A stretch of DNA of 63,891 nt, counting the filler, from Octopus bimaculoides (taxonomy: Eukaryota): assembly GCF_001194135.2 (NCBI RefSeq). It is 7 parts of 7 records of this genome, joined end to end, with 100 filler letters (N's around TTAATTAATTAA, not from the genome) between each part and the next. Parts side by side here need not be neighbours in the genome. Positions count along the whole stretch, not along the records: positions 54,584 to 62,768 come from NW_026323509.1; 6 more parts are not named here. One strand, 5' to 3'. The notes beneath the pieces were generated by a model that worked only from the letters and a program-made list of their open reading frames with translations, was not told the DNA's origin and searched no databases. The position numbers and the translations under genes are program-made. Positions 54,484 through 62,768 of the stretch are shown in pieces (position 1 is the stretch's first letter; each line of letters starts with the position of its first letter).

Positions 54484-54585
54484 NNNNNNNNNNNNNNNNN
54501 NNNNNNNNNNNNNNNNNNNNNNNNNNNTTAATTAATTAANNNNNNNNNNNNNNNNNNNNNNNNNNNNNNNNNNNNNNNNNNNNAA

Positions 54586-55248
54586 CTCGTGTGTGGTGGT
54601 CATTATATTAGAGACATGACTCGAAAAGAGAGACTCAAGAAATACAGAAGAATATGGAAGAAGAACAAGTTTTACTATTATTGCAAAGACCCCGACATCT
54701 TTGACCCTTATTATGTGGATTTGTTTGATATAAAAGATGGGAAATGTAAAGATGAAGTGTGTTGGGGGAAGATGAGGAGAATAGGAAGGTTGGAGGGAGA
54801 TGAAGGGGTGGAGGATGTGGGAGTCACATCTTTTGGTGATGTTGTTGTTGTGAGGAGGGAGAAGAAGGAGTTTGGATGGTGGAAAGATTGGTGTGTTGTG
54901 GAATGGTTCAGGGAAAAGTCTTTGGTGAGGAGAATAAGAATAGAAGGAAGAAAATATTCTGGTCTGGTATGTTATATTGCAAGACCTCATTTAACCATAA
55001 TTGGTGAATGTGTTTATATAACAGATACAATAAACAATATTTACGAAATACCTCGACATATTGAAGGGAAAACACCTGAAGATGATGAAATCCTGATATC
55101 TGAAGATAATCCAAAATATTTACTTCTCAGTGAAGACGATAATGAAGTCTTTGAAGTATTTGGTTTTGATGTTTCAGAAAATTCTTTGATGGTTTTTGGA
55201 ATTATTCCTGGACCTCAATCCTTTGCTTTCTTTCATTATGACAAATAA
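54586..55248 (+). CDS. Paralogue of the beta-propeller gene, C-terminal part only (5' end lost at scaffold join)
   Basis: 219-aa ORF, frame open from the gap edge (LVCGGHY...). Aligns with the last module of the 59880-62768 protein: LVCGG-HYI.DMT, YYVD, VTS.GD+VVV, Y+.D..NNIY.IP.HIE, GFDVSENSLMVFGIIPG.QSFAFFHYD. Confidence 0.85.
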   Translation, partial: LVCGGHYIRDMTRKERLKKYRRIWKKNKFYYYCKDPDIFDPYYVDLFDIKDGKCKDEVCWGKMRRIGRLEGDEGVEDVGVTSFGDVVVVRREKKEFGWWKDWCVVEWFREKSLVRRIRIEGRKYSGLVCYIARPHLTIIGECVYITDTINNIYEIPRHIEGKTPEDDEILISEDNPKYLLLSEDDNEVFEVFGFDVSENSLMVFGIIPGPQSFAFFHYDK

Positions 55249-55951
55249 ATATTTCCAGAAATATTAAACTTCAATCTTATTCTTTTTATTATTATAAATG
55301 GGTTCACCCGGGAATNNNNNNNNNNNNNNNNNNNNNNNNNNNNNNNNNNNNNNNNNNNNNNNNNNNNNNNNNNNNNNNNNNNNNNNNNNNNNNNNNNNNN
55401 NNNNNNNNNNNNNNNNNNNNNNNNNNNNNNNNNNNNNNNNNNNNNNNNNNNNNNNNNNNNNNNNNNNNNNNNNNNNNNNNNNNNNNNNNNNNNNNNNNNN
55501 NNNNNNNNNNNNNNNNNNNNNNNNNNNNNNNNNNNNNNNNNNNNNNNNNNNNNNNNNNNNNNNNNNNNNNNNNNNNNNNNNNNNNNNNNNNNNNNNNNNN
55601 NNNNNNNNNNNNNNNNNNNNNNNNNNNNNNNNNNNNNNNNNNNNNNNNNNNNNNNNNNNNNNNNNNNNNNNNNNNNNNNNNNNNNNNNNNNNNNNNNNNN
55701 NNNNNNNNNNNNNNNNNNNNNNNNNNNNNNNNNNNNNNNNNNNNNNNNNNNNNNNNNNNNNNNNNNNNNNNNNNNNNNNNNNNNNNNNNNNNNNNNNNNN
55801 NNNNNNNNNNNNNNNNNNNNNNNNNNNNNNNNNNNNNNNNNNNNNNNNNNNNNNNNNNNNNNNNNNNNNNNNNNNNNNNNNNNNNNNNNNNNNNNNNNNN
55901 NNNNNNNNNNNNNNNNNNNNNNNNNNNNNNNNNNNNNNNNNNNNNNNNNNN

Positions 55952-55991
<40 letters not shown>

Positions 55992-56026
55992 TATTTAGGT
56001 ATGTATGTATTATGTATTAGGTATGT

Positions 56027-56204
56027 ATAACGGATTTTGGTGCCCAATGGTGATACGATTAGACAAATTGAACATTTTTTTGGCCTATGACACTACATGG
56101 ACACATTTCTTTTTCACTGCTGTGACCGGGTGTTGACCTAATGGATTTTTTCAATAACTTTTCAAAATATTTTCGTATCACCATTGATCACCAAAATCCG
56201 TTAT
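56027..56204. mobile_element. MITE, 178 bp, 32-bp terminal inverted repeats
   Basis: ataacggattttggtgcccaatggtgatacga (56027-56058) versus tcgtatcaccattgatcaccaaaatccgttat (56173-56204): 30/32 complementary. The termini are compatible with a TA target duplication. Confidence 0.75.
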
Positions 56205-56312
56205 TTCAACTGACTAATGAAACGAGATCGCTTCCGAACGGTAATATATAACCTATCATTGACACGAGCACTTTAATTAGCACCAATTCCTTTTAATTAG
56301 CACTAAATCAGG

Positions 56313-57802
56313 ATGGTATCTTGCACTGCCTGTACTTTAACTTTGTTTGACGGGATTTATAGATTTCGATATAATGATGACTTGGCATTGCAATTTTTCC
56401 GCCAACATGGAGTTGTCCCTGCATCTGTGAATTGCCTAACATGTAATACACCTTGCATTATTAGAAATGGGACTAATATGGTTCGATGTAGGAAGATGGT
56501 TCGTCATCGGAGACAAAGGAAAACAGAATGCAGGTTTTCAGTGTCCATTTTCAAGAACACCTTTTTGGAGCGAAGCCGTTTACCCCCTTGGAAAGTTCTT
56601 GTGTTTCTTTAATTGTTTCCTAACAGATAATTGGTTGCATAAATCTGTTATGGAAAATTTAGATATAATGCTTGCTATGTCTGTTGATTGGCGATCTTTC
56701 TGTTGTGAAGTTTGCCTTCATTGGGTTGAAAACTGCCGTGCACAAATTGGAGGGCCAGGGATTGCAGTGGAGATTGATGAAGCGGTTTTGGTTAGAAGAA
56801 AATACAACCGAGGTAGGCTTGTAAAGACTATTTGGCTCTTCGGGGGAATTGAACACAAATCGAAAAAACAATTTTTGATGCCTCTATCATCGGAATGTGG
56901 GGAAGGGGAAAGACGAAATGCTTCAACTCTTCTCCCGCTAATCAAATGTCACATATATACTCAAAACATTNNNNNNNNNNNNNNNNNNNNNNNNNNNNNN
57001 NNNNNNNNNNNNNNNNNNNNNNNNNNNNNNNNNNNNNNNNNNNNNNNNNNNNNNNNNNNNNNNNNNNNNNNNNNNNNNNNNNNNNNNNNNNNNNNNNNNN
57101 NNNNNNNNNNNNNNNNNNNNNNNNNNNNNNNNNNNNNNNNNNNNNNNNNNNNNNNNNNNNNNNNNNNNNNNNNNNNNNNNNNNNNNNNNNNNNNNNNNNN
57201 NNNNNNNNNNNNNNNNNNNNNNNNNNNNNNNNNNNNNNNNNNNNNNNNNNNNNNNNNNNNNNNNNNNNNNNNNNNNNNNNNNNNNTTATCACTGACCTTC
57301 AACTCTCGGGGTGCCCCTCTTTCGCTCTACTCGCCCATATACACACACAAAAAAAAAACATGGGAATTTCGTGTAGCCACTTTGTTTACCATGTAGGAAA
57401 TTTACGATTTTCAAATCGACACATAACACCCATTTATGTTTTGGACTAGAAACTCAATGATGTTGGAGGTTCTGCAGAGGCCATGGGCTCTACTCAACCA
57501 TCCAGACTATTATTTATAGTGACTGTTGGGGCGCTTATAGTTCCCTTCAAAATTTAGGTTATACACATTTTCAAATTAACCATAGAACTTCGTCGATCCG
57601 GCAAACGCGTTAGTTCACACACAGACCATAGAACGATTGTGGGGGCGGGGGCCTCAAGAGAGCTGTTTTACGGCCCGGAATTAAACCGTGTTTCTTAAAG
57701 CAATATATTGCTCGATATCAGTTCATGCAGGCTTTCCGTCCTGCTTCCAAAAGAATGCACGATTTTTTATTGCAGGCTGCCAGGCTGTATCCTGGACCAT
57801 GA
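56313..57802 (+). pseudogene. Merlin (ISXO2/IS1595-like DDE) transposase, frameshifted and interrupted
   Basis: N-terminal zinc-ribbon (CLTC...C); IGGPGIAVEIDEAVLVRRKYNRGR..WLFGGIE; after the insertion IIYSDCWGAY, GYTHFQINH/NFVDP..VHTQTIERLWG, and C-terminal YIARYQFM..FLLQAARLYPGP* (TGA 57800-57802). Frameshift near 56610. Confidence 0.9.
56951..57509 (-). repeat. Duplicate of the 59228-59560 transposase segment, inserted inside the Merlin ORF
   Basis: 56951-56970 (acatatatactcaaaacatt) matches 59228-59247. 57286-57509 matches 59361-59560 except for 22 extra nt (ttggactagaaactcaatgatg). The middle is an N gap. Confidence 0.85.
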
Positions 57803-57905
57803 AGATTTTCGTCCTGAGAATAAATATCTTTACACGCAGCTTCTGCACCAACTGACAACATTTCATCAATCCATAGGGTACTATTCAAGAAGAGTGGTCC
57901 CTGTG

Positions 57906-57975
57906 CGCGCACTCGCACACACGCGCTAGCTAGTCGTGACTAGTCGATCCTACGACTACCTAGCGCGAGTGCGCG
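57906..57975. other. CpG-rich imperfect palindrome downstream of the Merlin ORF
   Basis: cgcgcactcg[cacacacg]cgctagctagtcgt versus acgactacctagcgcgagtgcgcg: 23/24 complementary apart from an 8-nt bulge. Confidence 0.75.
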
Positions 57976-58759
57976 TCATGCGCAAAGCATGTATGAGGGT
58001 TTTTTTCTAAACAAAATAAATTATTTTTTTAAACAAAGTAAATAAATTATGCACTACCTGTTTTTGGTAAAGAGTCCATTAAATAGTCGGTCTTTCAAAA
58101 TCTACTGGTTGTTCAATGGTAACAGTACATGAGGGACATTACAAGGAATTATCTTTTGCCTAACCCCTACCAAATTGATGGACGTTTTAAGAGTAAGATG
58201 GGGAAGATTCNNNNNNNNNNNNNNNNNNNNNNNNNNNNNNNNNNNNNNNNNNNNNNNNNNNNNNNNNNNNNNNNNNNNNNNNNNNNNNNNNNNNNNNNNN
58301 NNNNNNNNNNNNNNNNNNNNNNNNNNNNNNNNNNNNNNNNNNNNNNNNNNNNNNNNNNNNNNNNNNNNNNNNNNNNNNNNNNNNNNNNNNNNNNNNNNNN
58401 NNNNNNNNNNNNNNNNNNNNNNNNNNNNNNNNNNNNNNNNNNNNNNNNNNNNNNNNNNNNNNNNNNNNNNNNNNNNNNNNNNNNNNNNNNNNNNNNNNNN
58501 NNNNNNNNNNNNNNNNNNNNNNNNNNNNNNNNNNNNNNNNNNNNNNNNNNNNNNNNNNNNNNNNNNNNNNNNNNNNNNNNNNNNNNNNNNNNNNNNNNNN
58601 NNNNNNNNNNNNNNNNNNNNNNNNNNNNNNNNNNNNNNNNNNNNNNNNNNNNNNNNNNNNNNNNACCATTAAGTCTTTAAAAATAACACGATTGAATAAA
58701 CCAAGACCCATAAGTTTTTTTCATCAAATCATTAAATAAACTAACAGCAGAAATAAAAC

Positions 58760-59560
58760 CTTCGTGACCATAAGAACTTTGGTAAAATGTTTGTCTTTCT
58801 TGATTGTCTGTCATGTTCAATGCTATTTAAGTCTCTTTTGATACTCCAGCAGGAGTCAGGCATCATTAGTTTGTCCCACCGTCCCTGGTCGCTCTCTGCC
58901 ATTGTTTTGATATCCTGATGGAATCGTTCTCCTTGCTCATCACTCTCTTCGCATAAATGGCTATGTAAAGAAAGGAACCTTTAATACTCATATTAGCACC
59001 AATGTCCTCTAGACTTTTCCACAGCTTTTCCATTAATTCCTTGTAATTTTCGGCCCGGCGATTGCCCAAGAAGTTTCTCACCACATCAACATACGCTATC
59101 CAAGCACGGAATTTCCAAGTCATTCATTGAAGTAACAAACTTATCATCCCTAATTAGTTTTCTGATATCAGGACCCTCAAACACTCCTGCTTTGAGTTTT
59201 TCGGTGTTAAGTCCTGCAAACAATTTACATATATACTCAAAACATTCACTTTCTTTATCGAGTGATTTTACATACTGTTTCATTAATCCCAATTCGATAT
59301 GCAAGGAAGTGAAGATGATTTTTTTTCTCTTTCGGAACTAGCGCTGCACTAATAACTTTCTTATCACTGACCTTCAACTCTCGGGGTGCCCCTCTTTCGC
59401 TCTACTCGCCCATATACACACACAAAAAAAAAACATGGGAATTTCGTGTAGCCACTTTGTTTACCATGTAGGAAATTTACGATTTTCAAATCGACACATA
59501 ACACCCATTTATGTTGGAGGTTCTGCAGAGGCCATGGGCTCTACTCAACCATCCAGACTA
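58760..59560 (-). pseudogene. DNA-transposon transposase remnant, Chapaev3 (CMC)-like
   Basis: Minus-strand motifs KWVLCVDLKIVNFLHGKQSGYTKFPCF, LHIELGLMKQYVKSLD..F.YI.KLF, KLKAGVFEGPDIRKLI, AW..VVRNFLGNRRAENYKEL, GANMSIK, RYQGRWD.LMM.D.CWSIKRD. Superfamily assignment is from recollection of this conserved protein family. Confidence 0.7.
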
Positions 59561-59879
59561 AGCAAATAAAAACACATACATACATGCATGATGTATACAC
59601 ACGTGTACTTGTATATACATACAGCATCTTTCCATAAATATACACATTCAGCATCCTTGAATACATGGATACAAATGCACATCTACGCATACATACACAT
59701 GTAAAAATGTATATAGAGTTTAATACACACACACACATACATGTATCTAGTGAGAAAGAATATTGAAGAAAGTTACAATAACTGTTAGTGTGTAGAATGC
59801 AATGTCAGTGATTTCGGTTCAATTTCCAGGTGAGCCCTGTAGCAATAATAACAACAAAGTTAAGAATTTATTAAAATAT

Positions 59880-62768
59880 TTATCTGTCATAATGAAAGAA
59901 AGCAAAAGATTGACAACCTGGAATAATTCCAAAAACCATCAAAGAATTTTCTGAAACATCAAAACCAAGAACTTTGTAAACTTCATTATCAATACCTCTC
60001 AGGAGTAAATATTGTTGAATATCTTCAGATGTTTGATGTTCAATATGTCCAGGTATTTGGTAAATATTGTTATATCTGTCTACTATATACACATATTTAC
60101 CATGTGTAGTTAGATAATGTCTATGAATGTTGTTATACAGATATCTTGGTAGTTTTATACTTCTGACCAAATGTTCACTGAACCAAATGACATCATAGGC
60201 ATAGCCACTCCAGGATCTTTCCCGCTCTTCCTTCACAACAACAATATCACCACCAGATGTCACTACTATATCCAACACCACCTCTATCTCCACCTTCTTT
60301 CTCAGCCAAGAGCACACTTTATGTATGTATTTACATATCTCTCCATCAATAGCAACTACATCTACATAATAGGAAGACCAACATCTTCTACATTCAGTCA
60401 TGTCTTCAATATAATGACCACCACCACACACAAGTTGATTGTCGTTGTATTTATAAATCCTGTTGTAGAATTTTTCAGTTCTGATGGTTTTTAAACAGCA
60501 GAGATCTCTGTTGAAGAACATCAGCTGTTCACCAAAGGCGACAATGAAACATTCATCAGTCCACCAACATATGTCTAGTGGTTGTTGTTGTAGTAGTTGT
60601 TTGTGTTGAAGTATGTCTCCTGTCATTGTGTTAATTAATGTGACACTTTCTCGAAACATCAACACACTCACATTCTCATCTAACTTAATTAGTTTACTGT
60701 TGTAATCTCTACTGTCTTCGATATCATAATTAACAGGTTCAGTGCATGTAGGAATGGAAAGAGGGACCATTGCTGTTCTATATGGAAGTCTCCTCACTGA
60801 TATTTCATCAGTTCCTGATATACTTTCTGCTATGTAATTACCACATCTCACCTTTATTCTACCTTTACTAATTATTTTACCTGATTCACCTCTTCTTCCT
60901 CCATCTCCTCCACTGTATTTCAATTTATTAATCAAGTCATTACTGAATATTTCCTTGTTTGTCTCAGATGTAATGGAAGGGAAATGAAGACCAGAATCAA
61001 GATTTAATAACGACACAGATTCCAGAACCTTCACTTGGTCCCCATCAATCTTTATGCAATGACATTCAATCAATTCAATATGTTGACACCAGTAAATACC
61101 CCCCACTTTTCTCCATATTACACCATAAGGGATGAGACTTGTCCAAGCTTGAGATGTCTTCAAATTTTTTCCATTCAGTTGAAATATTTCTTTTCTTTTG
61201 GAAACCGTGGCCATTATGTGTTTTTCTTGTGTAAAACACACACCACCAACTAAACTTCCAACATCTCTGTGACATAGCAGCTCCCCGTCTTCATCAAATA
61301 TTTTAACATTTCCATTATTGGCTTTTTCACACANNNNNNNNNNNNNNNNNNNNNNNNNNNNNNNNNNNNNNNNNNNNNNNNNNNNNNNNNNNNNNNNNNN
61401 NNNNNNNNNNNNNNNNNNNNNNNNNNNNNNNNNNNNNNNNNNNNNNNNNNNNNNNNNNNNNNNNNNNNNNNNNNNNNNNNNNNNNNNNNNNNNNNNNNNN
61501 NNNNNNNNNNNNNNNNNNNNNNNNNNNNNNNNNNNNNNNNNNNNNNNNNNNNNNNNNNNNNNNNNNNNNNNNNNNNNNNNNNNNNNNNNNNNNNNNNNNN
61601 NNNNNNNNNNNNNNNNNNNNNNNNNNNNNNNNNNNNNNNNNNNNNNNNNNNNNNNNNNNNNNNNNNNNNNNNNNNNNNNNNNNNNNNNNNNNNNNNNNNN
61701 NNNNNNNNNNNNNNNNNNNNNNNNNNNNNNNNNNNNNNNNNNNNNNNNNNNNNNNNNNNNNNNNNNNNNNNNNNNNNNNNNNNNNNNNNNNNNNNNNNNN
61801 NNNNNNNNNNNNNNNNNNNNNNNNNNNNNAGCAATACATTTATATTCATTTCCTGTCAGGTACGTTACCAACAACAATGGGAATTCAACTTTTAATGTCA
61901 ACAATTGGCACTTAGCACCATAAGTTGTAATAACCAGCGTTTTTGACTGCCAACGACACATATTAATAGGAAAAACATTCAATTTGATAGAGTCCACAAG
62001 CTGACCATCAAATGTGAATATCTTAATGTTTTTATTTTTCCAGTCATATGATGCTATCAGGTTATTTTCAATAACACACAAACGGCGAATGTACACTGGA
62101 TATTTGTCTCCAAAACCTGGAGGGACAGCAACATGTCTAGCTTTGTCAGAAACTGTCAGATCCTGTACATATAACGAAGAAGACAACATTTCACTGACAC
62201 AGATTTTTCTGGAAAATACATCCATCAGATTGATATAAATGTTAAGTTGATTATTTGTAACGAGATCATTAACCAACAAATTATGATCGTTTATAGCAAA
62301 CATACGGCTGTTGTCTATCAGATAAATAAACATTTTATCAATAGATCCACCGTAGAGATTGGGGGGACGTTTCACTTGGGACATTAAAACACTGGGGACC
62401 ATCTTACTACTACTACTACTACTATAACCACCACCACTACAGTTACTAGTGTTGTACTGAAATGCTATTTTCCTAGTAACAATTAATAATTTTGGTGTTT
62501 CAATTTCAATTGCTAATGATTTCACAAAAAAAGGGATATTAATTGTCTTAATTGTTTCAACTTGATTATAATAATTGATGGCTAAAATATCTAAATGTGA
62601 TGGTTTATCACAATAACAAACAATTTCACCTTCACCCATCTTACACACCCGTACATAAGGCTGCCCTAATGATACACTTCTCACTGTCTTCGATAGGTTT
62701 CCAATGACCCTCAATTGCTTCTGTAGGGGTAATGTGACACCTATTTGATGAGAATCCCATTGACATAT
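59880..62768 (-). CDS. Intronless tandem beta-propeller (NHL/TRIM-propeller-like) protein, 5'-incomplete, internal gap
   Basis: 944-aa ORF in the track (59880-62714). I read the frame further upstream and it stays open to the gap at 62768 (ICQWDSHQIGVTLPLQKQLRVIG...), so the true start is missing. Recurrent propeller-type motifs: YDWKNKNIKIFTFDGQLV..PINMCRWQSKTLVIT, NNGNVKIFDEDGELL..GGVCFTQEKHIMAT, PLDICWWTDECFIVA. N gap 61334-61829. Stop TAA at 59880-59882. Fold assignment is by motif pattern only. Confidence 0.8.
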   Translation of the reverse strand: MCQWDSHQIGVTLPLQKQLRVIGNLSKTVRSVSLGQPYVRVCKMGEGEIVCYCDKPSHLDILAINYYNQVETIKTINIPFFVKSLAIEIETPKLLIVTRKIAFQYNTSNCSGGGYSSSSSSKMVPSVLMSQVKRPPNLYGGSIDKMFIYLIDNSRMFAINDHNLLVNDLVTNNQLNIYINLMDVFSRKICVSEMLSSSLYVQDLTVSDKARHVAVPPGFGDKYPVYIRRLCVIENNLIASYDWKNKNIKIFTFDGQLVDSIKLNVFPINMCRWQSKTLVITTYGAKCQLLTLKVEFPLLLVTYLTGNEYKCIAXXXXXXXXXXXXXXXXXXXXXXXXXXXXXXXXXXXXXXXXXXXXXXXXXXXXXXXXXXXXXXXXXXXXXXXXXXXXXXXXXXXXXXXXXXXXXXXXXXXXXXXXXXXXXXXXXXXXXXXXXXXXXXXXXXXXXXXXXXXXXXXXXXXXXXXXXXXXXXXXXXXXXXCEKANNGNVKIFDEDGELLCHRDVGSLVGGVCFTQEKHIMATVSKRKEIFQLNGKNLKTSQAWTSLIPYGVIWRKVGGIYWCQHIELIECHCIKIDGDQVKVLESVSLLNLDSGLHFPSITSETNKEIFSNDLINKLKYSGGDGGRRGESGKIISKGRIKVRCGNYIAESISGTDEISVRRLPYRTAMVPLSIPTCTEPVNYDIEDSRDYNSKLIKLDENVSVLMFRESVTLINTMTGDILQHKQLLQQQPLDICWWTDECFIVAFGEQLMFFNRDLCCLKTIRTEKFYNRIYKYNDNQLVCGGGHYIEDMTECRRCWSSYYVDVVAIDGEICKYIHKVCSWLRKKVEIEVVLDIVVTSGGDIVVVKEERERSWSGYAYDVIWFSEHLVRSIKLPRYLYNNIHRHYLTTHGKYVYIVDRYNNIYQIPGHIEHQTSEDIQQYLLLRGIDNEVYKVLGFDVSENSLMVFGIIPGCQSFAFFHYDR

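What the first reader, a model, noticed from the sequence alone, without database searches (positions are those of the whole stretch)
54586..62768. Convergent pair of intronless multi-beta-propeller genes with hypervariable loops: candidate diversified recognition family
Seen: at least 2.9 kb of continuous frame (apart from an N gap) encoding about four related propeller-like modules, and a tail-to-tail paralogue 4.6 kb away. Over the shared module, the scaffold strands are conserved but the loops differ radically in length and charge. Examples: DMT-RKERLKKYRRIWKKNKFYYYCKDPDIFDP-YYVD versus DMT-ECRRCWSS-YYVD, and TPEDDEILISEDNPKYLLL versus TSEDIQQYLLL. Loop DNA is purine-rich and low-complexity, and an (ACT)/(CCA) microsatellite is translated as SGGGYSSSSSS. 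Established: NHL-type propellers are ligand/RNA-binding surfaces, and B-box/TRIM-propeller genes are expanded in molluscs. Inference: a lineage-specific, clustered, rapidly diversifying family (innate immune or anti-transposon recognition is plausible). Several propellers in one large exon is unusual. The N-termini are missing, so TRIM membership is unproven.
Basis: partly seen in the sequence, partly recalled or inferred. Interest (0 to 1): 0.78.

Follow-up and report, generated by a model that had tools for sequence, protein, structure and literature searches.

The report
Octopus-only giant multi-propeller gene pair
The piece holds the tail-to-tail ends of two members of an uncharacterised, octopus-restricted family of very large single-exon proteins built from about six divergent NHL-like beta-propellers; one copy is conserved and the other drifts at the neutral rate, so the evidence fits an ordinary birth-and-death family better than a hypervariable recognition system.

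Summary
The sequence observations hold. Gene B (minus strand, 62768 to 59883) is an open frame of 313 + 483 codons around one N gap. Gene A (plus strand, 54586-55245) is a 220-codon C-terminal fragment, 46% identical to B's end and lying 4.6 kb away, tail to tail.

Both belong to an orphan family found only in octopods (Octopus, Argonauta). Intact relatives are 1,650-1,925 aa. In the five copies whose DNA I read, the coding sequence is one exon. Relatives start with a basic/helical N-terminus without RING or B-box.

B's C-terminal module models as a beta-propeller. The repeated modules are distantly but significantly related to the C-terminal domain of a cuttlefish TRIM2/3-like RING-B-box protein.

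An O. vulgaris locus carries the same convergent pair. B's counterpart there is open and colinear across the gap, and B's "loops" are almost unchanged (dN/dS about 0.4). A's long loop is family-typical. A evolves at dN/dS about 1, in strands and loops alike in its subfamily.

Verdict: a new multi-propeller architecture of a known fold. "Lineage-specific and expanded" is supported. "Hypervariable loops" and "TRIM" are not. An immune role is untested.

The parts
54586..55245 (+). Gene A: the last 220 codons, most of the C-terminal propeller module. It is the long-loop subtype. The 5' part is cut off by the piece edge.
   Evidence: Open frame. 46% identical to B's end. 74-77% aa identity to many Octopus relatives. 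Positional counterpart in O. vulgaris L009(+): 75.9% aa, dN/dS 1.02.
55246..55315 (+). Stop codon of A plus a conserved 3' flank, running up to the assembly gap.
   Evidence: DNA similarity to paralogues and to B continues past the stop.
54613..54720 (+). A's long blade loop (DMT-RKERLKKYRRIWKKNKFYYYCKDPDIFDP-YYVD).
   Evidence: Present with the same length in most family members and in the O. vulgaris counterpart. It lies where the B model has a low-confidence loop between strands.
54736..54825 (+). Purine-rich low-complexity coding tract (80-83% purine).
   Evidence: Composition. Two O. vulgaris gene models (P0010, P0012) slip into the +1 frame in or just after the matching stretch.
62139..62768 (-). 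Gene B, module 3 of about 6. It starts roughly 60 residues into the module at the piece edge and includes a low-complexity linker. Boundaries are approximate.
   Evidence: Maps to residues 760 onward of the 1,867-aa O. sinensis relative. Cuttlefish-domain HMM hit at B_N 1-79, 20.7 bits.
62406..62438 (-). Microsatellite-encoded linker SGGGYSSSSSS inside module 3.
   Evidence: (TAC)n array. Coordinates. This linker varies in length and sequence among relatives.
61830..62138 (-). Gene B, start of module 4. The rest of the module lies in the gap.
   Evidence: HMM hit at B_N 228-282. Colinear with relatives.
61334..61829 (.). Assembly gap inside B's coding sequence. It is expected to hold about 208 codons (about 622 nt): the rest of module 4 and the first part of module 5.
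   Evidence: Relatives are open and colinear across it. 622 nt in O. vulgaris L009(-), same residue mod 3 as the N run.
60747..61333 (-). Gene B, module 5, ending in the GGDGGRRGESG linker and a conserved stretch (GRIKVRCGNYIAE...RRLPYRTAMVP). Module 5 is among the best conserved across paralogues (87-91% aa to B's closest relatives). Bases 61332-61333 are a partial codon.
   Evidence: HMM hit at B_C 12-107. 91% aa identity to O. bimaculoides P0001. dS 0.08 to paralogues against 0.23 to its own orthologue, which suggests gene conversion.
59883..60746 (-). Gene B, module 6: the C-terminal propeller, short-loop subtype.
   Evidence: AF2 model of 59883-60878: pLDDT 71.4, pTM 0.73, 26-27 strands in groups of four. 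Foldseek PDB matches listed are beta-propeller proteins. dN/dS to orthologue 0.32-0.35.
59707..59882 (-). Stop codon of B plus a conserved 3' flank.
   Evidence: Aligns to the 3' flanks of paralogues and of the O. vulgaris orthologue.

Best explanation
A and B are the 3' parts of two neighbouring, convergently transcribed members of an octopod-restricted orphan gene family.

**Architecture (shown in relatives).** A full-length member is a protein of about 1,650-1,925 aa. In the copies whose DNA I read, the coding sequence is one exon, preceded by what looks like a splice acceptor just before the ATG. The protein has an N-terminal region of about 195 aa that is lysine/arginine-rich and then helical, with no signal peptide evident. 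It is followed by about six modules of about 220-330 aa, joined by low-complexity linkers.

**Origin of the modules (shown).** The modules are highly divergent beta-propellers, probably NHL-type and six-bladed. They share ancestry with the C-terminal domain of cephalopod TRIM2/3-like RING-B-box proteins. The octopod proteins themselves have lost, or never had, the RING-B-box part.

**The two genes (shown).** The pair is old: the same tail-to-tail arrangement exists in O. vulgaris. B is a maintained gene under moderate purifying selection, with patches homogenised by gene conversion from paralogues. A belongs to the expanded subfamily that fills one small chromosome next to C2H2 zinc-finger genes. 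That subfamily evolves at about the neutral rate, and three of the four sampled O. vulgaris copies outside this pair carry frameshifts or stops, a typical birth-and-death pattern.

**Mechanism (inferred, not shown).** The product is an intracellular, possibly nuclear, multivalent binding scaffold. Its propeller faces bind RNA or peptide ligands, as NHL domains do, and the fast-changing last propeller would set specificity.
For: **Family range and size**
- All hits are Octopus or Argonauta, apart from two unnamed records, weak WD40 matches and the distant cuttlefish TRIM-like proteins. There are about 50 clusters.

**Gene structure and N-terminus**
- An intact 1,867-codon single-exon ORF in O. 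sinensis, with CAG 8 nt before the ATG.
- Single-exon 1,674- and 1,680-aa orthologues on other chromosomes.
- No Pfam or PDB sequence match, and no RING or B-box in any N-terminus.

**Fold**
- AF2 and Foldseek results.

**Distant homology**
- The family profile finds the cuttlefish RING-B-box protein at E 2.7e-5 in a library of 1.8 billion proteins. hhalign gives 78.7% probability.
- That protein's N-terminal part is closest to TRIM3 and TRIM2.
- An HMM of its C-terminal domain hits relatives 4-5 times in tandem and B four times, far above shuffles.
- Nine of the ten weak PDB profile hits are NHL domains of Brat, TRIM2 or TRIM71.

**Synteny and selection**
- O. vulgaris locus L009 holds the counterparts of both genes in convergent order.
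- B: dN/dS 0.42-0.47, and 0 of 20,000 neutral simulations stay stop-free.
- A: dN/dS 1.02, with Nd:Sd equal to the neutral expectation and different from B at p 0.006-0.01.
- Broken copies in L001, L002 and L003.
- dS varies 0.08 to 0.52 along one gene pair.
Against: - No NHL or WD40 Pfam model reaches threshold on any member. The best is 18.5 bits against a cut-off of 20.
- The blade count (6 or 7) is not settled. Top structural matches are mostly 7-bladed WD40 domains, at TM only 0.45-0.6.
- The 781-aa model was poor (pLDDT 52.7), so the number of propellers rests on motif spacing and HMM hits.
- Direct profile comparison between modules was not significant.
- Function, expression and localisation are untested.
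- The dN/dS values are simple pairwise Nei-Gojobori estimates on short regions, in a family with gene conversion.
- A is only a fragment, and 26% of neutral simulations keep it open. It may be a pseudogene.
- The window's species is inferred, not known.
Confidence: 0.6

Rival explanations
1. This is a rapidly diversifying recognition family, for innate immunity or against transposons. Positive selection reshapes hypervariable propeller loops on a conserved scaffold, possibly as part of TRIM-type proteins.
For: - The family is multi-copy and lineage-specific.
- The A-type C-terminal module evolves at dN/dS about 1 while long ORFs stay open in several copies.
- All indels fall in loops, and non-strand columns are somewhat more variable: 0.94 against 0.73 bits, p 0.015.
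- There are two very variable patches in blades 4-5.
- The module descends from a TRIM-type C-terminal domain.
Against: - The loops quoted as hypervariable are subtype-specific and conserved between species.
- dN/dS is no higher in loops than in strands in the A subfamily.
- B is below 0.5 everywhere.
- A's Nd:Sd equals the neutral expectation.
- Many copies are broken.
- There is no RING or B-box.
- No signal peptide or other immune-type domain was found.
Confidence: 0.15
2. Both copies in the window are dead relics of a decaying gene cluster, and the open frames are left over by chance or refreshed only by gene conversion.
For: - Three of the five other sampled O. vulgaris copies carry stops or frameshifts, and the counterpart of A has one frameshift.
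- A's rate is neutral, and 26% of neutral simulations keep 220 codons open.
- Transposon debris fills the space between the genes.
Against: - B keeps 796 visible codons open, against 0 of 20,000 neutral simulations.
- Its orthologue keeps at least 1,275 codons open.
- dN/dS between them is 0.42-0.47, and 0.24 in strands.
Confidence: 0.08
3. The modules are WD40-type, or another non-NHL propeller class. The link to TRIM-NHL-like proteins is convergence or chance.
For: - The best structural matches are WD40 propellers and the clathrin terminal domain.
- There are weak profile hits to two WD40-repeat proteins, at E 7e-6 and 8e-4.
- Pfam NHL is below threshold.
Against: - There is reciprocal sequence similarity to the C-terminal domain of a TRIM2/3-like protein, covering about 100-115 residues (up to about 210 in one conserved paralogue) at several tandem positions.
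- Nine of ten PDB profile hits are NHL domains.
- Strand grouping fits six blades plus a closing strand.
- Module length of about 220-330 aa fits six blades of about 45 aa.
Confidence: 0.15
4. The large ORF is cargo of, or derived from, a mobile element, which would explain the many dispersed single-exon copies with a conserved 3' end.
For: - Copies are dispersed along one chromosome.
- The 3' flank is conserved.
- Isolated copies of the last 82 codons plus flank occur in L009.
Against: - No transposase, reverse transcriptase or integrase domain was found in 1,867 aa.
- No terminal repeats were seen.
- Homology between loci extends into ordinary upstream non-coding DNA and fades gradually.
- Two family members on other chromosomes are single-copy orthologues conserved in three species.
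- The convergent pair is syntenic between species.
Confidence: 0.02

Closest known systems
TRIM-NHL proteins (TRIM2, TRIM3, TRIM71/LIN-41, Brat), and in particular the cuttlefish TRIM2/3-like protein CAE1277228.1 (P0075)
   Same: The repeated module is homologous to the C-terminal domain of the cuttlefish protein. The weak PDB profile hits are NHL domains. Module size and strand pattern fit a six-bladed propeller. By analogy, binding of RNA or protein on the propeller face is expected.
   Different: There is no RING, B-box or recognisable coiled coil. There are about six propellers in tandem instead of one. The coding sequence is a single exon. Pfam NHL is below threshold. The family is restricted to octopods.
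Multi-propeller scaffolds: DDB1/CPSF160/SF3B3 (three WD40-like propellers) and tandem WD proteins such as Utp21, EML and IFT-A subunits
   Same: They are the best structural matches to the 781-aa model (E about 1e-11 to 1e-12). They are also chains of propellers in one intracellular polypeptide that act as binding platforms.
   Different: There is no sequence relationship. TM-scores are only about 0.2 on a low-confidence model. Those proteins have seven-bladed WD-type blades, are universally conserved, and are not expanded.
LRP5/6-type arrays of YWTD six-bladed propellers
   Same: Several six-bladed propellers lie in a row within one protein.
   Different: Those are extracellular and separated by EGF domains, and they have signal peptides and many exons. 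No sequence similarity was found. This comparison is from general knowledge and was not tested here.
Lineage-specific expanded gene families of octopus (C2H2 zinc fingers, protocadherins)
   Same: Large coding exons, many octopus-specific paralogues, and physical neighbourhood with C2H2 genes. One chimeric gene model fuses the two (P0024). The expansion of C2H2 genes in cephalopods is described in PMC12513265.
   Different: The protein fold is unrelated. The family is far smaller (tens of copies, not hundreds). No published description was found.

Membership tests
TRIM (RBCC) proteins | N-terminal RING finger | tested here: not met
   The window lacks the N-termini. Full-length relatives (O. 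sinensis L004, O. vulgaris L002, P0051, P0053, P0054, P0055) start at a Met, conserved as MED(Q/H)T in the close relatives, with no RING. Pfam finds none.
TRIM (RBCC) proteins | B-box zinc finger(s) | tested here: not met
   No B-box hit in any relative. The cuttlefish relative scanned in the same run shows RING and B-box clearly.
TRIM (RBCC) proteins | Coiled coil after the B-box | tested here: inconclusive
   The N-terminal region looks helical, but hhalign against the first 400 residues of the cuttlefish protein gives 0.4% probability. No coiled-coil predictor was run.
NHL-repeat six-bladed propeller (Pfam PF01436) | NHL repeat profile matches at or above the curated score | tested here: not met
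   No hit for A or B at E<=1. The best in the wider family is 18.5 bits against a cut-off of 20 in P0055, and 12.1 bits in P0062.
NHL-repeat six-bladed propeller (Pfam PF01436) | Sequence relationship to bona fide TRIM-NHL C-terminal domains | tested here: inconclusive
   Significant similarity to the C-terminal domain of a TRIM2/3-like cuttlefish protein, but that domain itself has no Pfam NHL hit. Nine of ten PDB profile hits are NHL domains, at E 0.2-2.
NHL-repeat six-bladed propeller (Pfam PF01436) | Six blades of four antiparallel strands | tested here: inconclusive
   The model of 59883-60878 has 26-27 strands: five clear groups of four, a last group of three, and three low-confidence N-terminal strands. 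That fits six blades with a closing strand, but seven is not excluded.
Beta-propeller fold in general | Predicted structure matches solved propellers | tested here: met
   pLDDT 71.4, pTM 0.73. 777 PDB matches at E<=0.001, and the 50 best listed are propeller-containing proteins, with TM 0.45-0.60. The poorer 781-aa model matches multi-propeller proteins.
WD40 repeat proteins | WD40 profile matches | tested here: not met
   There is no Pfam WD40 hit above threshold. One stretch of about 55 aa gives weak matches to two WD40-repeat proteins.
   About 50 clusters at 90% identity in three Octopus species. Most O. vulgaris members lie on the 29-Mb chromosome OX597841.1, at 3.1, 6.0, 17.9, 22.0 and 22.5 Mb. 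They are spread along it with local pairs, not in one tandem array.
   - A subfamily: about 1 in strands and in loops.
- B against its orthologue: 0.24 in strands, 0.40 outside them.
- The quoted loops are conserved between species.
   No expression data are available here.

The most novel reading that the evidence does not exclude
Octopods evolved a private class of intracellular sensors by stringing together about six copies of a TRIM-NHL-type propeller without the ubiquitin-ligase part. In this reading, conserved members such as B act as a fixed scaffold. The expanded A-type members, whose last propeller changes at the neutral rate while long reading frames stay open, form a diversified repertoire that recognises RNA of viruses or transposons. 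The conserved convergent A/B pair would then be a functional unit.
Probability: 0.1. Interest if true: 0.8.

Novelty: new variant of a known kind. Interest (0 to 1): 0.42.

Why it matters
All members of this family are labelled "uncharacterized" or "hypothetical" in the databases, and many are split into frame-shifted fragments. I found no paper that names the family.

This work gives it a first anatomy: about six NHL-like propellers in one coding exon, descended from a TRIM-type C-terminal domain. It also gives a range (octopods) and a split into conserved and fast-evolving branches.

That adds one more lineage-specific expansion to the octopus genome, next to the C2H2 zinc-finger clusters. 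It offers a clean natural experiment: a conserved and a neutral-rate paralogue held tail to tail across species.

It also corrects the annotation. The true genes are about 5-5.7 kb single-exon ORFs.

Tried and rejected
- **Pfam on A, B and relatives** found nothing above threshold.
- **PDB sequence search with the full-length relative** found nothing.
- **Profile comparison between modules.** hhalign of six arbitrary segments gave probabilities of at most 33%. Module relatedness therefore rests on the outside HMM.
- **A first MAFFT alignment** of fragments misplaced several of them. I replaced it with BLAST-anchored mapping.
- **N-terminus against the TRIM RBCC region:** no similarity.
- **Mobile-element origin.** Flank comparison shows ordinary fading homology and no terminal repeats, so I rejected it.
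- **L001-L005 as orthologues of the window.** All are paralogues at 71-88% nt identity. The true counterpart appeared only with L009.
- **O. bimaculoides record for P0003:** not on file.
- **tRNA and Rfam scans of the piece:** empty.
- **Literature searches** by topic and by six locus names found nothing on the family.
- **ISXO2-like transposase.** My recollection that the intergenic ORF is one got only a sub-threshold Pfam match.

Full report
**1. What is in the piece**

Only 54584-62768 is real sequence. On the plus strand, a frame open from the piece edge runs from 54586 to a stop at 55246-55248. This is 220 codons, called gene A here.

On the minus strand, a frame enters at the other edge (62768) and ends at a stop at 59880-59882. 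It consists of 313 codons (B_N, 62768-61830), a run of 496 N (61334-61829), and 483 codons (B_C, 61331-59883).

A aligns to the end of B at 46% identity, E 1e-42. The two genes end 4.63 kb apart, tail to tail, and the repeat finder also reports them as an inverted repeat.

The (TAC)n array at 62405-62424 is part of the stretch translated as SGGGYSSSSSS. The tract 54736-54825 is 80-83% purine.

**2. The gap**

B_N and B_C map, in order, to residues 760-1130 and 1344-1866 of an intact 1,867-aa relative from O. sinensis.

In the O. vulgaris counterpart of B (section 6), the segment between the two flanks is 208 codons, or 622 nt, of open frame. Both 622 and 496 leave remainder 1 on division by 3. 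The two bases left at the gap edge (xTG) fit the GTG valine that relatives have there.

So the halves very probably belong to one continuous ORF. The true gap is probably about 125 nt longer than written. This rests on homology, not on reads. The other three N runs lie in non-coding DNA.

**3. The family**

Three word-indexed searches and one exhaustive profile search were run. Together with the cluster look-ups, the named hits come from these sources:
- Octopus bimaculoides, O. vulgaris and O. sinensis.
- Argonauta hians.
- At the weak end, a cuttlefish protein and two WD40-repeat proteins.

Two further entries carry no source name.

No member has a curated domain, and none resembles a solved structure by sequence. 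Most O. vulgaris members sit on one 29-Mb chromosome. O. bimaculoides members sit on an 18.6-Mb chromosome and several O. sinensis members on a 15.1-Mb scaffold.

Many gene models are fragments. Reading the DNA shows why:
- O. sinensis L004 carries an uninterrupted 1,867-codon ORF in one exon.
- O. vulgaris L002 has the same ORF with one in-frame stop.
- L001 has at least two frame breaks.
- L003 has a frameshift and a truncated 5' end.
- Some models (P0010, P0012) end in the +1 reading of the purine-rich tract.

Two more distant members (P0053/P0066/P0067 and P0055/P0069/P0070) are single-copy and at least 90% identical across the three Octopus species. Those read at DNA level (P0053, P0067) are also single-exon, about 1,674-1,680 aa.

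I found no paper on the family.

**4. N-terminus: not a TRIM**

Close full-length relatives start with a conserved MED(Q/H)T. It is preceded by a pyrimidine tract and CAG that look like a splice acceptor. A lysine/arginine-rich stretch (for example KKQKRHK) follows, then a helical region, about 195 aa in all.

No RING, B-box or signal peptide is present in any of eight N-termini inspected. Profile comparison with the RING-B-box part of the cuttlefish protein is null.

The window itself lacks the N-termini, so for A and B this is inference from relatives.

**5. Fold and origin of the modules**

A 781-aa O. bimaculoides relative modelled poorly (pLDDT 52.7), but it is all-beta in groups of four strands. 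It matched multi-propeller proteins such as DDB1 and tandem WD proteins.

The window's own C-terminal module (59883-60878, 332 aa) modelled acceptably: pLDDT 71.4, pTM 0.73, 26-27 strands. It gave 777 PDB matches at E<=0.001. The 50 best listed are propeller-containing proteins, with TM 0.45-0.60.

At sequence level:
- The family profile reaches a Sepia pharaonis protein (E 2.7e-5 in 1.84 billion proteins; hhalign 78.7%).
- That protein has RING and B-box domains, and its N-terminal part is closest to TRIM3 and TRIM2.
- An HMM built from the C-terminal domain of that protein and two relatives hits the O. sinensis protein at 725-841, 1057-1169, 1342-1449 and 1603-1653. It hits other members four to five times.
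- It hits the window's B at B_N 1-79 and 228-282 and at B_C 12-107 and 246-302.
- Observed scores are 26.9 and 24.6 bits, against at most 6.3 in 1,000 shuffles of each sequence.
- The family profile against PDB sequences gives only weak hits (E 0.2-2), but nine of the ten are NHL domains of Brat, TRIM2 and TRIM71.
- One relative has a near-threshold NHL repeat (18.5 bits against 20).

A recurring motif, of the type (D/G)IC-W...I-(V/A)T-P....L..I, occurs at about residues 240, 494, 770, 1083, 1371 and 1604 of the O. sinensis protein. This is from my reading. It suggests six modules of about 220-330 aa.

I conclude that the modules are divergent propellers, probably of NHL type, that share ancestry with a TRIM-NHL-like C-terminal domain. 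Blade number (6 or 7) and the NHL label remain unproven. Direct module-to-module profile comparison was not significant.

**6. The pair is conserved, and the two genes behave differently**

O. vulgaris locus L009 (chromosome OX597841.1, about 22.0 Mb) carries a plus-strand member and, 6.2 kb downstream, a minus-strand member.

B aligns to the minus-strand gene colinearly through the last module and into the 3' flank, at 88-92% nt identity. A aligns to the plus-strand gene at 87.6%. The minus-strand gene is open for all 1,275 codons held in the locus. The plus-strand gene has one frame break far upstream.

B against its counterpart:

| Region | Result |
|---|---|
| Overall | 85-88% aa identity, dS 0.13-0.18, dN/dS 0.42-0.47 |
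| C-terminal module, strands | dN/dS 0.24 |
| C-terminal module, outside strands | dN/dS 0.40 |

B's DMTECRRCWSSYYVD differs from its counterpart by one substitution and one deleted residue. TSEDIQQYLLL is identical.

A against its counterpart: 75.9% aa identity, dN 0.131, dS 0.128, dN/dS 1.02. The long loop keeps the same length. A's replacement:silent counts (64:15) equal the neutral expectation (0.81 against 0.80). They differ from B's at p 0.006-0.01.

As a yardstick, the conserved single-copy paralogue gives dS 0.099 and dN/dS 0.39 between O. vulgaris and O. bimaculoides.

In a substitution-only neutral simulation, B stayed free of stops in 0 of 20,000 runs and A in 26%. B is therefore a maintained gene. 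A cannot be told apart from a pseudogene or a very relaxed copy.

**7. "Hypervariable loops"**

In the family alignment, A's long loop and its EDDEILxxxDNPKYLLL loop are the majority state. B's short versions are shared, in form, with O. vulgaris P0006/L002 and B's own orthologue. They are old subtype differences, not fast-changing sites.

Across 22 sequences, non-strand columns are only modestly more variable than strand columns: 0.94 against 0.73 bits, p 0.015. All indels lie in loops. Two patches (B 60192-60236 and 60102-60146) are the most variable.

In pairwise codon comparisons within the A subtype, dN/dS is about 1 in strands (0.8-4.0) as well as in loops (0.6-1.6). That pattern fits relaxed constraint better than loop-directed positive selection. 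Pairwise estimates on about 100 codons are noisy, though.

**8. Mosaic evolution**

dS between B and one paralogue (L004) runs from 0.08 in module 5 to 0.52 in the last half-module.

B's module 5 is closer to paralogues than to its own orthologue: 91% aa identity to O. bimaculoides P0001 and dS 0.078, against dS 0.227. This points to gene conversion. It also warns against simple tree-based tests.

**9. Likely mechanism and its limits**

Shown:
- the architecture;
- the fold of one module;
- the taxonomic range;
- synteny of the pair;
- the selection regimes.

Inferred:
- The protein is intracellular, because no signal peptide is evident.
- It is possibly nuclear, because of the basic stretch.
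- By analogy with NHL and multi-propeller scaffolds, it acts as a multivalent binder of RNA or peptides.
- The last propeller is the most changeable part.

Nothing here bears on an immune or anti-transposon role. The neighbourhood of C2H2 zinc-finger genes may only mark a duplication-prone chromosome.

**10. Verdict**

The TRIM and hypervariable-loop ideas do not survive comparison with relatives.

The thing is a new architecture of a known fold, in a family that has not been described. Interest is moderate.

The window's species is not given. The closest matches and the gap-rich assembly style suggest an Octopus, possibly O. bimaculoides, but I could not confirm that.

Noticed in passing
window 57286-57440 and 59361-59515 (also 57452-57509 and 59503-59560): A 155-nt direct repeat at 100% identity, plus a 58-nt one at 95%. 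The first copy begins exactly at the edge of the N gap 56971-57285. The 20 bases before that gap (56951-56970) recur at 59229-59248. This is either a young dispersed repeat or an assembly duplication. Its translation (GGSAEAMGS.PPSRLS) also ends an O. sinensis gene model (P0029).
   Followed up: partly
window 56313-57800 (+): Broken ORFs that resemble an ISXO2/IS1595-like DDE transposase, interrupted by the gap and the repeat above. Only a sub-threshold Pfam match supports this (PF12762, E 0.0019, 18.7 bits against a cut-off of 27).
   Followed up: partly
window 58741-59304 (-): Three short overlapping ORFs in different frames that look like a decayed transposon-type gene. They have no Pfam match.
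   Followed up: partly
window 55952-56028; also L001 14236-14381, L003 about 12118-12260, L004 about 11147-11200: A (TA)16/(GTAT)n microsatellite follows the conserved 3' flank of gene A. A similar one sits at about the same distance behind the paralogues in O. vulgaris and O. sinensis.
   Followed up: no
L009 15761-16006 (+), 20730-20975 (-), 21163-21408 (-): In the O. vulgaris counterpart of this locus, the space between the two convergent genes holds three extra isolated copies of the last 82 codons of a family member; the flank beyond them matches gene A's 3' flank too.
   Followed up: no
window 60912-61331 (B module 5): This module is closer to paralogues (dS 0.08) than to B's own O. vulgaris orthologue (dS 0.23). 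A patch of gene conversion is the likely cause.
   Followed up: partly
Relatives P0010, P0012, P0024; L001, L002, L003: Public gene models of the family are often fragments. Two slip into the +1 frame in or just after the purine-rich tract, one is fused to C2H2 zinc fingers, and one 1,782-codon ORF is split by a single in-frame stop. These could be real lesions or assembly errors; I did not settle which.
   Followed up: partly
window 59883-59990 and 55140-55245: The last 35 or so codons (DVSENSLMVFGIIPG.QSFAFFHYD) are nearly identical between A and B at DNA level. Over the last 40 codons dN is only 0.11 (against 0.37 for the whole last half-module), while dS (0.54) is not reduced. The motif is conserved in most members whose models reach the C-terminus. 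Its role is unknown.
   Followed up: partly
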